From Magallana gigas (taxonomy: Eukaryota): a stretch of 64,000 nt of DNA. The position numbers were made by a program, and so were the translations under genes. Under the pieces are notes generated by a model. That model searched no databases. It saw only the letters and a program-made list of their open reading frames with translations, and was not told where the DNA came from. Below, one piece after another: positions 13,907-18,726 of this stretch (position 1 is the first letter of the stretch; the number at the start of each line of letters is the position of its first letter). The DNA is taken from positions 22,568,001 through 22,632,000 of the forward strand of contig NC_088860.1 of the NCBI RefSeq assembly GCF_963853765.1, given 5' to 3'.

Positions 13907-14627
13907 CCAATTGTAGATTTAGAGGAGAATGTTGTTTTGTCTTTTAATTAATATTCTGGTTGGATCCAAAATAAAATTATAGTTACATTGATAAACACGT
14001 TATTACCGTTTAGGCATCTTCACTTAAAAAGAGCATTTGGTCAAATCTGCTCCTGCAGAGTGGGCCAAAAAAACCTTGAATAGGGAAGATGCCCAATAGG
14101 GTTCATTATGGAGTTCATCATGGCCATGTTTTAATTCTCCTGATTCTCCTGATGTACCAATTATGAAGTACTGGTACATTTATAACCTAACATTTCATTG
14201 ATAAAATCACAAGTACTCTGTAGGAATCAGACAAAAATTTGTTTAAGTGATCAAATAAACAATATAATTGTGTTTTCATTATGAGATATGACCTAGTTAT
14301 AACAACACATTTATTTGTAATTTCTGCATTTAGTGTTTTCAATTATGTCCTTAATGATGGTATAAGTACCACTAGATGCTAGACAATTGTCGGTCACAGA
14401 GTAGGTTATGGTTCCTCCTCCATCTCGGGGATTTCCACTGCTTCCATGGAGATTCAGTTCCCTGTCCTGCTGAAGATCTTGACAGAGACACACACATGCA
14501 ACTATTTCATTTCCTCTATAACTGTTGGACTTCCATGTGAAAGGCTCTTTTTTTTTTTTTAAATCATTTACCAGTAATATTTCCTCTAGCTGTTGAATCT
14601 CCATAGGATAGGCTCTCTTTAAATCAG

Positions 14628-14994
14628 TGAGGAAGTTGGGGCTATATGGATCATGGATATTGGCCTGGATAGCTCAGTGGTAGAACTCCTGACTAGAGTT
14701 TCAGGGGTCCCAGGATCGATTCTTGGTCCAGCCATATGTTTTCATTATTTCTACCATCCCGTTACATTTGGTGCCATGACTAACCCCTGGAACTGACAGG
14801 TGAACTCCTGCCAGGGGAAGAGCCTGGGGTGATCTTCGAGGGCGAAGATCAGTTAAAGGGGAAGGAATATGACAGTCTGACAGATTCGAATGCCAGCGCC
14901 AGATAGCTCAGTTGGTAGAGCACCTGACTAGAGATTCAGGGGACCCAGGGTCAAATCCCGGTCTGGTCCATCATTATTTTTCCATCCAGTTACA
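14628..14994 (+). mobile_element. TRIM-type non-autonomous LTR retrotransposon with tRNA-like cores in its LTRs (Helenus-like)
   Basis: 4-bp TSD TCAG (14624-14627 and 14995-14998). 5' LTR TG..TTACA 14628-14766; PBS TGGTGCCATGACT at 14769; PPT AAAGGGGAAGGAA 14855-14867; 3' LTR TG..TTACA 14870-14994. Each LTR carries a tRNA-like unit with A box TAGCTCAGT(T)GG. Confidence 0.8.
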
Positions 14995-16913
14995 TCAGTT
15001 ACAAGTAATTAACAAATGACAAGGTTGTACGCTCTACTCTTTTATTGTTTTTATTTAATGAATCATTTGATAACCAGTCCACATACCTACATATTTCTAC
15101 AAAAAATGACTAACAGTCATGGAGAGAAAAATACAAGACCATGGAAACTTAACAACAACTGATACATATACATAACAATTAAGAAATGGTGGAGTTACTG
15201 AATGACAGCCAGTTCCCAAGTATTGGTTGCCATGTAAACACACACCCCCCTGTTAATGACCATGGCCTTCCTAGCCTTTTGTCTGAGCAGTCCAGGGATA
15301 AAACATATCATTTACTGAAATGAATGCTGATAACTGCCTACATTGAAAAAGTATACAAGCCAGGGGATATGACATGGACATAATTTCTACCTAAAAAATT
15401 TTGATCCAAGTATGATCTTTACAATTCATATTTTTAAAAATAAGAAAAACAATTGATATCTAGGGATTTTTTTAAAAGTTAAAATTCAGATCAGTGGTTT
15501 AAAATGATCTCTGTGCAATTTCTAAAACTATCGGTATTTATAGACATACATATAAACATGAAAAAACAAATCTGGTTCACCTGTACAAAATGCGCTCGGA
15601 TACTACCAGTGTAAGAGGGCAACAGATGAACCAGATTTTATTACCAGAACCAGTACAATTCGCCAGAGAACTGTATAATAGTAATTCACTTGATGCTATA
15701 CATCATCAGTACTAGTACAATTCATCAGGTGCTGTACATTAAGAATAGATTCGGAGGAATTGGGGATTGAAGTGGTAGCCAAGATGCATGCTGTATCAAT
15801 TTCACTAACCTTTGAATGAGCATTTACAAAGATACTGTAGATCGATTCCTAATTAAACGTATGGAATTAATATCCACAAAAAATCGCGAGAAGCAACCCT
15901 CGCCGATTTTATAATCACGCTTATATTTTTCAGACAGTTTTGAACTAGGTAAAAGAAATCATAGCAGAAAATTGGTGCTCCCTATTTTATACTCTCACAA
16001 TTTTGATACAAAAATCAGTGGAGTCGTGGAATTAGGTACTTATGTAAAATAAGGAATTTACAGTACATGTACTACATATCATTTAGTTATTCCAACTAGC
16101 AAACTATTAAATGAACTAATAATATTTCATAAATTAGGAATGTATACACAATGTCATTATTGTACAGTGACTTTACGATTGTTGGAATGACTTTTCTTTG
16201 TCACTATGTTTTGGCACAAGGATTAATATAAAGTAAAATCAAGATATCAATGCTTACTACGTCTGTGCAATACTAGTAGTTTTCATTATACCATATACAC
16301 ATGTAGGTATTGTAAAGATATGTTAGTAATATTGAGCTTGATAATTCAAACAGAATAACTGCAGAAATCAGTATTTTCACTTATCTAGAAAGGTATAGGT
16401 TCAACACCCCTCCCCCCTTCACACTATTAACGAAAATACAAACTTGAATAATGCCCTGCATGAACAAATGCACAGACACAAATATAGCATGAAGAGAAAA
16501 AAGTTATTCTGTTTCAATACACCCCATTTACATACAAAACTCTATGTATGCACACAATTCCTCTCAAAGATTCCAAAAGAAAAAATGGAAATATTATTTT
16601 ACAAAGTAAAATTAGTTGGATATATATGAATCCCTTTGCATGTGCAAATATCTTTGTGCAGTTTATTATCTGATTCAGTTAAATTTTGTGGTGCAAATAT
16701 TAGTGTTTCAGGGAATAGGGGCATGGTTTTCATATTTTCTTATTTTCAATAAAAAAAAAGATTTTAAAATAGATCTATGCACTATTTGCATTACCTGTGC
16801 ATTGGTGAAAAAAATTTATCAAGATTCTGCAAAACAATAATGACCATATTCAAAGTTACATAACATCTAAACTGTTTATTGTTTATGATCTTTCTAGCTC
16901 TCAGCTCTTTATC

Positions 16914-18726
16914 TCAGCTAAATCTGGCCACCAGAGTCTGTATATCAGGAAGTATATCCTTGACTAGGACTCTATCTTTCTTTCTATCTACCAAACAACG
17001 CTGTGAAATCATGAACAGATCGTCAGCGGTCTGGGTACACCACCCTCCTGCCCGGGGGTCGAGAAGGGGAATGATACTTTCTTCTACATTCTCAACAACA
17101 TGACTCAAAAGGTCTGTCTCTTCTCGAGTGCTGTCACTCGGTGGAAGACCTGTTAAAATTTCCAAAAGCACCACACCAAAAGCAAAAGAGTCTAGTTTAG
17201 CGGATATGTCAAACCTAATGGCCTCCGGAGCCATGTAGGCAGAAGTTCCGATCACTAGTTTTGTAGAGGCCACTGTGGTACTACTTCCAGATGGAGCGAG
17301 TCTCGCGGTGGCAAAATCACCCACTTTCGGCACAAAATTTTCGTCCAGTAAAACGTTTGCACTTTTGATATCCCTGTGAACTAAACCACAGTCATTCAGG
17401 TACACAATTCCTTTTGCTGTTCCACAGGCTATGTTTAGTCTTAAGTGCCAGGACAAGGGTGCCGTGCCATTCAAGCAGTGGAGTCTGTCCTCTAGAGAGC
17501 CATTGGGCATGAACTCATACACTAAACACTTTTCTGGACCATCGATAGAGTACCCCACTAGTTCCACAATGTTTTCATGATGATAATTTGCGAGCGTTTG
17601 CAGTTCTGTCTCAAACTGCTTTTGCATGACCGGATCCTCTGGATCTTTTAGTCTCTTGACAGCCACAACATACTGGTTGGAAAAACTAGCTTTATACACC
17701 GTTCCAAAGCCTCCCCTTCCTATAACACTACCACCCTGGGAAGCTGGCCTATCGTCAAAGTTATTAGTGTGATACTGCAGCACTGCGAAGTTGATGGCTT
17801 GAGACCCGGGCTGGTAGACCGCGGAGAGTTGTTTTGGGATATGTTTTTCTGAGGACTCTGAACAGGACGGTGCAGCATCCAGATTGGGACTCTGTTCTCC
17901 ACTGTCATAGGACTCGATTCTGTTCACCATCACACCATTTTCCGAGGGGTGACAATGCGCGAAGGAGAGAGAATCGTGTCTCGCTGAGTCCTGACTACTA
18001 CAGGTGGTGCTTGTGTCATTATCTGTTGAGCTGTCCGGCTGGACAGAGGCAGTGTCTGGCACCTTCACTCTGTTGTATAGTTCTCTTTTTTCAAAGCTTC
18101 TGTTCTCCAGATTTTTCTGCTCATTTGGAGTTAGAGAGCAGGAACCCACTGGTGATAAAATGGGTTCGTCCTCTCGTGGCACAGGGTCTCCTTTGAGTTG
18201 AGTGACAGATAGATAATCCGCTGCTGCATAGAGTCGAGCCTTACACAGAACTTTGATTAGATGTCTTACACTGGCATTCTGTGTTCCCCATTCTTCCAGT
18301 ATAATTCTGAAATAAAGAAAGATTCGTGAAAATCCGGGTTTTATGAAATGGTAACATAAGTACTTCCATATATTACTGCTGAAAAATGACACACGTGGCC
18401 AGAAAGGAATTAACTTATGAGTTGAATAGTTTTTTGTTAAATTTTATGAAAAATGTGTAAATATAATAGTATCTTCAAATCATTTATCGATTAAGCTTAT
18501 CTACTTACTTGGTAGCGTAAGCACCAGGTTTGGATGCTCTGTTTTCGATCATCTGCGCCTGAGATGTGCTGTATCTCTCCTCAAAATTATTTCCATCCAG
18601 TTGTTTTGGGATGTGACACAAAAGCCTTTTCCACAGCTGGTCTGGTTCCAAGAAATTTACGAGTTTTAGGATGGCAGAATACGGGAGTTTGCGGATGTAA
18701 GTTTCCGCCGTTACCTGATTCGACAT
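16914..18726 (-). CDS. IRAK4: Interleukin-1 receptor-associated kinase 4-like (death domain + Ser/Thr kinase), 536 aa, 2 coding exons
   Basis: Exon 18726-18509 (ATG..ACC AA|GTAAGT) joins exon 18306-16914 (TTTCAG|A ATT) in phase 2. Death domain: YIRKLPY..LEPDQLWKRL..ILEEWGTQNASVRHLIKVL. Kinase motifs: GRGGFG, VAVK, Tyr gatekeeper LVYEFMPNGSL, HRDIKSANVLL, GTSAYMAPE. Confidence 0.92.

What the first reader, a model, noticed from the sequence alone, without database searches (positions are those of the whole stretch)
14628..14994. tRNA-LTR TRIM with two different LTRs but an intact 4-bp TSD
Seen: TSD TCAG, TG..CA ends, PBS, PPT and internal hairpins (GATCTTCG..CGAAGATC; CCCCTGG..CCAGGGG). Each LTR has a tRNA-like Pol III cassette and a shared 3' end (CATTATTT..CCATCC.GTTACA), but their 5' portions are unrelated (TGAGGAAGTTGGGGCTATATGG.. 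versus TGACAGTCTGACAGATTCGAATG..) and the tRNA cores differ. Established: Cassandra TRIMs carry 5S cores, tRNA-core TRIMs have been described as Helenus (recalled from memory, with 4-bp TSDs in animals), and standard reverse transcription yields identical LTRs. Inference: this family propagates as a hetero-LTR unit, implying alternating-LTR tandem templates, template switching or a non-canonical replication route. Both B boxes look degenerate here.
Basis: partly seen in the sequence, partly recalled or inferred. Interest (0 to 1): 0.7.

Follow-up and report, generated by a model that had tools for sequence, protein, structure and literature searches.

The report
One-off chimeric oyster Helenus retroelement
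This is a real 367-bp miniature LTR retroelement with a tRNA-like unit in each LTR, but its two different LTRs come from a single old fusion of two published Pacific-oyster families (Helenus-2 and Helenus-2C), not from a family that copies itself with unlike LTRs.

Summary
Window 14628-14994 is a TRIM with TG..CA ends, a tRNA-His primer-binding site, a polypurine tract, a tRNA-like unit in each LTR (Rfam 37.6 and 43.4 bits) and TCAG on both sides.

The interpretation does not hold. Both LTR types belong to oyster families published by Kojima in 2024: Helenus-2_CGi ("A") and Helenus-2C_CGi ("B"). In this genome both families normally have two like LTRs and 4-bp duplications (16 of 19 B copies checked).

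A site-by-site comparison shows one sharp breakpoint at 14741-14745, just after the T-run that follows the A-type tRNA-like unit. Left of it the copy is Helenus-2. From there to the end it is Helenus-2C, which explains the "shared 3' end".

Whole-genome pattern counts give 69 B..B pairs, 7 A..A pairs and one A..B pair, which is this copy. The junction sequence is unique. No LTR of the kind expected in its progeny was found.

Both parts are about 9-10% diverged from their families, and both B boxes are degenerate.

The best reading is a chimeric cDNA made before integration, most simply by one plus-strand template switch between co-packaged cDNAs. It is a dead one-off. The scan has already noted Helenus copies elsewhere in this genome.

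The parts
14624..14627 (.). Left copy of the 4-bp target-site duplication, TCAG
   Evidence: It directly abuts the family-defined first base of the A-type LTR.
14628..14766 (+). 5' LTR, 139 bp, a chimera with TG..CA ends
   Evidence: The module scan reads A-head, A-tRNA, then B-tail.
14628..14742 (+). Helenus-2_CGi-type part of the 5' LTR: the head, the tRNA-like unit and the T4 run
   Evidence: 38 diagnostic sites are A-like and 3 are B-like; 10.4% diverged from A copies. It matches the published Helenus-2_CGi LTR motifs.
14663..14734 (+). tRNA-like unit 1. A box is TAGCTCAGTGG at 14670-14680. The degenerate B box is GGATCGATTCT at 14713-14723.
   Evidence: 37.6 bits.
14741..14745 (+). The single A-to-B breakpoint, TTT|TCA|TTA. 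The TCA microhomology is shared by both parents, and the site lies directly after the T4 run.
   Evidence: The 32-mer spanning the junction is unique in the genome at up to 3 mismatches.
14743..14766 (+). Helenus-2C_CGi-type LTR tail (CATTATTTCTACCATCCCGTTACA)
   Evidence: B-tail module at 95.8%.
14767..14867 (+). Internal region, 101 bp, Helenus-2C type throughout
   Evidence: 93% identical to the 2C internal region and 86% to the Helenus-2 internal region.
14769..14781 (+). Primer-binding site, complementary to the 3' end of host tRNA-His-GTG plus CCA, with two decayed positions
   Evidence: Kojima's supplement aligns Helenus-2C_CGi and Gypsy-39_CGi to tRNA-His-GTG.
14784..14817 (+). Internal hairpin 1 (CCCCTGG ... 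CCAGGGG)
   Evidence: The sequence is conserved across both families, with no covariation.
14831..14850 (+). Internal hairpin 2 (GATCTTCG AGGG CGAAGATC)
14855..14867 (+). Polypurine tract, AAAGGGGAAGGAA
14868..14994 (+). 3' LTR, 127 bp, wholly Helenus-2C_CGi type. Its first two bases read TA where the family reads TG.
   Evidence: 11% diverged from B copies, partly by CpG decay.
14897..14969 (+). tRNA-like unit 2. A box is TAGCTCAGTTGG at 14904-14915. The degenerate B box is GGGTCAAATCC at 14948-14958.
   Evidence: 43.4 bits.
14995..14998 (.). Right copy of the target-site duplication, TCAG

Best explanation
This is one old, dead insertion of a chimeric Helenus TRIM.

Two related non-autonomous families live in this oyster genome, Helenus-2_CGi (A) and Helenus-2C_CGi (B). 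They use the same tRNA-His primer site and make the same 4-bp duplications, so they probably share one Gypsy helper (inferred). Their small RNAs were probably packaged into the same particle (inferred).

During reverse transcription, or at the latest before integration, an A-type LTR head was joined to a B-type element. The head comprises the first 35 bases, the tRNA-like unit and the T-run. The join falls at a 3-base microhomology just behind the T-run.

The simplest route needs one event. Plus-strand strong-stop DNA started on an A minus strand and switched onto a B minus strand. It then made the normal second transfer on the B strand. The product is [A head + B tail]-PBS-B internal-B LTR. 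This step is inferred.

Integrase then inserted the chimera, duplicating TCAG. That both ends are exact family termini flanked by the same 4 bases is shown.

The copy did not found a lineage. It has since decayed by about 10%, including both B boxes.
For: Single sharp breakpoint: sites are 38 A to 3 B up to 14741, then about 47 B to 2 A to the end, and both exceptions are CpG decay. The module scan agrees.

Both parent families are published and normally have like LTRs with 4-bp TSDs. B copies show identical TSDs in 16 of 19 cases and 93-98% identity between their own two LTRs in 18 of 19 (the exception, L010, 85%).

The left end is the exact A-family terminus and the right end is the exact B-family terminus, with TCAG on both sides.

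Genome census: 69 B..B pairs, 7 A..A pairs and 1 A..B pair, this copy. The junction 32-mer is unique. B-head plus A-tRNA LTRs number 0.

The two halves are equally diverged, 10.4% and 8.7%, which fits one insertion date.

The stretch is held at 70-77% of sampled words by 14 runs (11 of them listed as DNA or probable DNA) from 8 studies, under two organism labels, so it is not an assembly artefact.

The literature says that minus-strand switching gives identical LTRs. It also records TSD-flanked chimeric complexes and a plus-strand recombination model (PMC1950507; PMC6894440; PMC3187697).
Against: No empty site or intermediate allele could be examined, because the reads call failed.

The plus-strand switch is inferred from topology only. 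Joining of two cDNAs by the host, or integration of two different cDNA ends followed by end joining, would give the same product.

The pattern censuses need near-exact motifs, so old decayed hetero-LTR copies could be missed.

Two other loci mix A and B LTRs (L032, L041). Mixing therefore recurs, and its route is not settled.
Confidence: 0.7

Rival explanations
1. Post-integration origin. A Helenus-2 copy and a Helenus-2C copy inserted independently side by side or at the same target. A later deletion by microhomology-mediated joining removed everything between the A tRNA-like unit and the tail of the B 5' LTR.
For: The junction sits at a 3-base microhomology (TCA), which is typical of end joining. 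Mixed A/B arrays exist elsewhere, and one of them (L032) has no matching flanks.
Against: It needs two insertions at the very same 4-bp target, or a chance flank match of about 0.4-0.6%. It also needs a deletion that leaves a tidy LTR-sized product. The two halves are equally diverged. No remnant of a second TSD or a second internal region is present.
Confidence: 0.17
2. One reading: a family that regularly propagates as an LTR-A/internal/LTR-B unit, through alternating tandem templates or a non-canonical replication route.
For: This copy has an intact TSD. Heterogeneous A/B arrays exist at two other loci, one of them flanked by TTAT on both sides.
Against: This is the only A..B pair at TRIM spacing in 564 Mb, at 0 mismatches and, apart from two A-INT-A elements whose A-type motif falls within tolerance, at up to 3. 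The junction is unique. The best non-self whole-element match is 87% identical and is B-INT-B. Both parent families have like LTRs.
Confidence: 0.04
3. Replacement of part of a normal like-LTR element after insertion, by gene conversion or by cDNA-mediated homologous recombination with a copy of the other family.
For: The families share about 80-86% identity in the tRNA-like, tail and internal parts, which could in principle support recombination.
Against: A conversion tract needs homology on both sides. The A head has no homology to the B head or to the flank. The B-like state runs to within 5 bases of the right end. No tract can therefore be anchored at either outer edge.
Confidence: 0.05
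4. Assembly artefact that joins reads from two different Helenus copies.
For: The families are repetitive and short.
Against: This copy is about 9-10% diverged from all others, so its 31-mers are largely private. Even so, 14 runs (11 listed as DNA or probable DNA) from 8 studies hold 70-77% of the sampled words of the 901-bp stretch. That is more than the flanks alone could give.
Confidence: 0.02

Closest known systems
[quoted passage not shown]
   Same: The tail of the 5' LTR, the whole internal region (93%), the PBS for tRNA-His, the PPT and the whole 3' LTR (89%) are of this family.
   Different: The first 115 bases of the 5' LTR are not of this family. This copy is older than the near-identical recent 2C copies, at 8.7% against 2-4%.
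Helenus-2_CGi (Kojima 2024; 139-bp LTR, 101-bp internal region, 379 bp, 4-bp TSD)
   Same: The head and tRNA-like unit of the 5' LTR, including the T4 run (38 of 44 diagnostic sites), and the exact 5' terminus.
   Different: The LTR tail, the internal region and the 3' LTR are not Helenus-2. Genuine Helenus-2 copies have A-type LTRs on both sides.
Template-switching complexes of LTR retrotransposons (Sabot and Schulman 2007, PMC1950507)
   Same: A chimera of two related elements, flanked by one TSD and hence integrated as a unit after recombination during reverse transcription.
   Different: Those complexes have three LTRs, with the two outer LTRs alike, as minus-strand switching predicts. This one has two LTRs that differ, which minus-strand switching cannot give.
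Cassandra TRIMs (Kalendar et al. 2008, as cited in PMC10886601)
   Same: A TRIM with a Pol III-type small-RNA gene unit in each LTR.
   Different: Cassandra carries 5S rRNA and is found in plants. Here Rfam finds tRNA and no 5S.
Strand displacement-assimilation model of retroviral plus-strand recombination (reviewed in PMC3187697)
   Same: It is the only class of reverse-transcription recombination that can leave the two LTRs different. It fits a breakpoint inside the 5' LTR.
   Different: It has never been shown for TRIMs, and it is inferred here from the structure of one copy.

Membership tests
Helenus (tRNA-LTR TRIM, Kojima 2024) | A tRNA-like sequence inside each LTR | tested here: met
   RF00005 scores 37.6 and 43.4 bits against a gathering score of 29. 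ARAGORN finds both.
Helenus (tRNA-LTR TRIM, Kojima 2024) | Short (under 1 kb), non-coding, with a PBS next to the 5' LTR and a PPT next to the 3' LTR | tested here: met
   The element is 367 bp. The PBS matches host tRNA-His-GTG. The PPT is at 14855-14867.
Helenus (tRNA-LTR TRIM, Kojima 2024) | 4-bp TSD in animals and TG..CA termini | tested here: met
   TCAG on both sides. Family copies have identical TSDs in 16 of 19 cases. The first dinucleotide of the 3' LTR has decayed to TA.
Helenus (tRNA-LTR TRIM, Kojima 2024) | Two LTRs that are direct repeats of each other | tested here: not met
   The heads are unrelated and the rest is 77% alike. This is explained by one A/B breakpoint.
Helenus-2C_CGi | Both LTRs and the internal region match the family | tested here: not met
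   Only 14743-14994 is of this family.
Helenus-2_CGi | Both LTRs and the internal region match the family | tested here: not met
   Only 14628-14742 is of this family.
Helenus (function) | Pol III transcription from the A and B boxes | not testable with these tools
   The A boxes are intact and both B boxes carry two changes each. The reads tool failed.
Cassandra | A 5S rRNA-derived unit in the LTRs | tested here: not met
   No 5S match at E up to 1. tRNA is found instead.

The most novel reading that the evidence does not exclude
Hetero-LTR copies such as this one are captured intermediates of LTR-module swapping. Many small Helenus RNAs share one particle, so plus-strand or other late template switches between families occur at a measurable rate. 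One further replication round of such an intermediate would fix a new head/tRNA/tail combination. That could explain why Helenus-2 and Helenus-2C share homologous tRNA-like, tail and internal parts but have unrelated LTR heads.
Probability: 0.15. Interest if true: 0.5.

Novelty: new member of a known kind. Interest (0 to 1): 0.28.

Why it matters
For annotation, this is an ordinary decayed Helenus copy whose two tRNA-like units should not be called as tRNA genes.

For transposon biology it is a small, clean example. It is a TSD-flanked LTR element with unlike LTRs and a single breakpoint inside the 5' LTR. Minus-strand template switching cannot produce that, so the structure points to late (plus-strand or post-synthesis) recombination between co-resident TRIM families.

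It also warns against dating such copies by LTR-LTR divergence.

Tried and rejected
Nothing was laid, so no empty-site or expression evidence was obtained.

The first tRNA-motif pattern for A..A with N{200,230} gave 0 because A copies are older and one family has a longer period. I replaced it with head-to-tRNA patterns. A..B and B..A with tRNA motifs gave 0, but this copy itself fails the exact A motif, so those two zeros are weak.

Other mixed loci: I looked for rules in L032 and L041. L032 has no matching flanks. L041 has TTAT on both sides but also a ~66-bp flank duplication. Neither settles the mechanism.

Hairpin covariation: no compensatory changes were seen, so there is no evidence for or against a structural role.

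Rejected on topology: gene conversion and cDNA-mediated homologous recombination, because no homology exists at the outer edges. Simple divergence of once-identical LTRs is also rejected, because the heads are unrelated and each matches a different family.

Per-column counts of copies were used only to classify sites. Family identities rest on the published sequences in Kojima's supplement. The paper PMC1170264 is not held.

Full report
**What is there.** Reading the window gives a 367-bp element at 14628-14994.
- 5' LTR: 14628-14766, TG..CA.
- Internal region: 14767-14867.
- 3' LTR: 14868-14994, ending CA.
- TCAG stands at 14624-14627 and again at 14995-14998.

Each LTR holds a tRNA-like unit. 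ARAGORN finds them at 14663-14734 and 14896-14970. Rfam tRNA scores them 37.6 and 43.4 bits against a gathering score of 29, and there is no 5S match. The two LTRs align at 77% from the tRNA-like unit onward, and their first 35-40 bases are unrelated.

The internal region begins with TGGTGCCATGACT. Seventeen places in the genome match TTCRAWTCNNNGTCACGGCA; fifteen read GGTCACGGCA, and the three loci scanned with ARAGORN are tRNA-His-GTG genes. With CCA added, their complement is TGGTGCCGTGACC. The PBS is therefore a tRNA-His site with two decayed positions.

The internal region ends with the polypurine tract AAAGGGGAAGGAA. Both B boxes carry two changes each.

One boundary needs correcting. 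Alignment to 19 family copies puts the start of the 3' LTR at 14868, where this copy reads TA and the family reads TG.

**Which genome and which families.** The assembly has 564 Mb in 29 contigs. Earlier notes of this scan call it the Pacific oyster.

Kojima (2024, PMC10886601) described Helenus as TRIMs with a tRNA-like sequence in the LTRs and 4-bp TSDs in animals, and reported them in Crassostrea gigas. His supplement prints Helenus-2_CGi, Helenus-2B_CGi and Helenus-2C_CGi.
- The Helenus-2 and -2B LTRs begin TGTAGTAGTTGGGGCTATATGG.
- The Helenus-2C LTR begins TGTGACGGTCAGACC.
- The supplement also aligns Helenus-2C_CGi (and lists Helenus-2_CGi) with Gypsy-39_CGi against tRNA-His-GTG.

I call them A (Helenus-2) and B (Helenus-2C).

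**What the families look like in this genome.** A search with the whole element found, besides itself, only copies at 87% identity or less. These match from the tRNA-like unit of the 5' LTR onward. They are B-internal-B elements with a 229-bp period, and some are three- or four-LTR tandem forms.
- Nineteen simple B copies have B-type LTRs on both sides.
- Sixteen of the nineteen have identical 4-bp TSDs.
- The two LTRs of one element are 93-98% identical in 18 of the 19 (the exception, L010, is 85%).

A search with the 5' LTR alone found a separate A-type population.
- A-internal-A elements whose internal region is 82-88% like ours, with TSDs CAAG, CATC and TTAA.
- Helenus-2B-type elements with a different internal region.
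- Solo LTRs with TSDs.

A subfamily variant of B with a changed tail carries that tail in both LTRs and has a TSD (L078). Like LTRs are therefore the rule in both families.

**Anatomy of the window copy.** I aligned it with 6 A-internal-A copies and 19 B copies. I scored only the columns where the two sets differ.
- From 14628 to 14741, 38 sites are A-like, 3 are B-like and 3 are neither.
- From 14745 to 14994, about 47 sites are B-like and 2 are A-like. Both exceptions are G-to-A changes at family CpG sites.

There is one breakpoint, TTT|TCA|TTA. It lies directly behind the T4 run that follows the A-type tRNA-like unit, and TCA is shared by both parents. A module scan reads the same: A-head, A-tRNA, B-tail, B-internal, B-head, B-tRNA.

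The A part differs from typical A copies at 10.4% of sites. The B part differs from typical B copies at 8.7%. CpG decay contributes in both. That fits one insertion of one age, older than the recent Helenus-2C burst.

**Is the hetero form a rule?** I ran whole-genome pattern counts.

| Pattern | Result |
|---|---|
| B-tRNA motif to B-tRNA motif at TRIM spacing | 69 |
| A-head to A-tRNA | 7 |
| A-head to B-tRNA, exact | 1, the window copy |
| A-head to B-tRNA, up to 3 mismatches | 3; the other two are A-internal-A on inspection |
| 32-mer across the junction, up to 3 mismatches | no second chimeric junction; the only other hit (3 mismatches) is an ordinary A-type tail |
| B-head plus A-tRNA LTR | 0 |

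The last row tests for progeny. One canonical replication round of an A-internal-B parent should produce an LTR with a B head and an A tRNA-like unit, and none was found.

The censuses need near-exact motifs, so they would miss very old copies. Within that limit the A-internal-B form is a singleton.

Two other loci mix A and B LTRs in longer, partly deleted arrays.
- L032 reads A-INTa-B-INTb-B and has no matching flanks.
- L041 reads A-B-INT-A-A and has TTAT on both sides, with a ~66-bp flank duplication.

Contact between the two families therefore recurs, but each case has its own structure.

**Is it real DNA?** Fourteen runs (eleven listed as DNA or probable DNA) from eight studies, under two organism labels, hold 70-77% of the sampled 31-mers of 14350-15250. 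The flanks make up only 59% of that stretch, and this copy's words are largely private. An assembly artefact is therefore unlikely.

I have no empty-site or transcript evidence, and I sent none of those letters to any search tool afterwards.

**How it most likely arose.** Canonical reverse transcription, including minus-strand switches between co-packaged RNAs, makes both LTRs from one template and hence identical (PMC1950507; PMC6894440).

Gene conversion or cDNA-mediated homologous replacement cannot be anchored. The A head has no homology to the B head or to the flank, and the B state runs to within 5 bases of the right end.

Two independent insertions plus a deletion would need the same 4-bp target twice, or a flank match with about 0.4-0.6% chance.

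Both outer ends are the exact family termini joined to one duplicated TCAG. The most economical reading is therefore that a chimeric cDNA was integrated as a unit.

One event suffices. Plus-strand strong-stop DNA begins at the PPT of an A minus strand. It copies the A head and the tRNA-like unit, switches at the T-run onto a B minus strand, and copies the B tail and PBS. It then makes the normal second transfer on that B strand. Recombination during plus-strand synthesis is an established though minor model for retroviruses (PMC3187697).

This route predicts breakpoints only in the 5' LTR or PBS, as seen here. Host end-joining of two cDNAs, or integration of two different cDNA ends followed by repair, would give the same product and cannot be excluded.

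Which steps are shown and which are inferred:
- Shown: the single breakpoint, the two parent families, the exact termini and TSD, and the uniqueness of the copy.
- Inferred: co-packaging, the shared Gypsy helper, and the strand on which the switch happened.

**Comparison and verdict.** The element meets the Helenus criteria except that its LTRs are not repeats of each other. It is not a member of either single family but a Helenus-2/Helenus-2C chimera.

It resembles the TSD-flanked template-switching complexes of Sabot and Schulman, but it has two unlike LTRs instead of three LTRs with like outer ones.

The inference of a hetero-LTR replication mode is not supported.

The families are already known, and other agents of this scan have filed Helenus copies from this genome. 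The copy itself is a tidy curiosity, with modest interest for the mechanics of reverse-transcription recombination.

Noticed in passing
L041 (G000:C5:20350910-20354048, minus strand), about 20352400-20353130: A four-LTR mixed array reads A - short internal - B - internal - A - very short internal - A. It is flanked by TTAT on both sides. About 66 bp of the left flank is repeated directly after the array.
   Followed up: partly
L032 (G000:C5:50409202-50412334), locus 1470-2066: A mixed array begins with only the first 8 bases of a B LTR fused to a PBS/PPT remnant. It continues A LTR - partly deleted A-type internal - B LTR - B internal - B LTR. The flanks do not match.
   Followed up: partly
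L004/L005, L011-L013, L018/L022, L023/L024 and G000:C2:47690547-47691324: Helenus-2C forms head-to-tail arrays of three or four LTRs with a 229-bp period. Kojima notes the same for a fish Helenus, and Satovic et al. note it for bivalve TRIMs.
   Followed up: partly
L078 (G000:C2:39664900-39665900), locus 347-705: This Helenus-2C variant has a different tail in both LTRs (CATGTTTTCTCCTTTCCTGTTACA, which contains a T4 run) and the TSD CTGC. Typical 2C copies contain no run of four T anywhere, so it is open where Pol III would stop on them.
   Followed up: partly
L077 (G000:C8:18542108-18545412), locus 1493-1873: In this A-internal-A element the first LTR has a B-like D-arm stretch (CAGTTGGTAGAGCACCTGAC) inside an otherwise A-type tRNA-like unit. 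This is another sign of exchange between the families.
   Followed up: no
window 16914-18392, minus strand: An uninterrupted 492-aa ORF has a full protein kinase domain (Pfam PF00069, E = 1.3e-42). It lies about 1.9 kb downstream of the element and may be an intronless kinase gene or a retrocopy.
   Followed up: partly
L007 and L017 (G000:C7:16590571 and G000:C3:43535914): Two Helenus-2C copies on different chromosomes share the same flanks and the same TSD, TCTC. The element was therefore copied there by a segmental duplication rather than by transposition.
   Followed up: no
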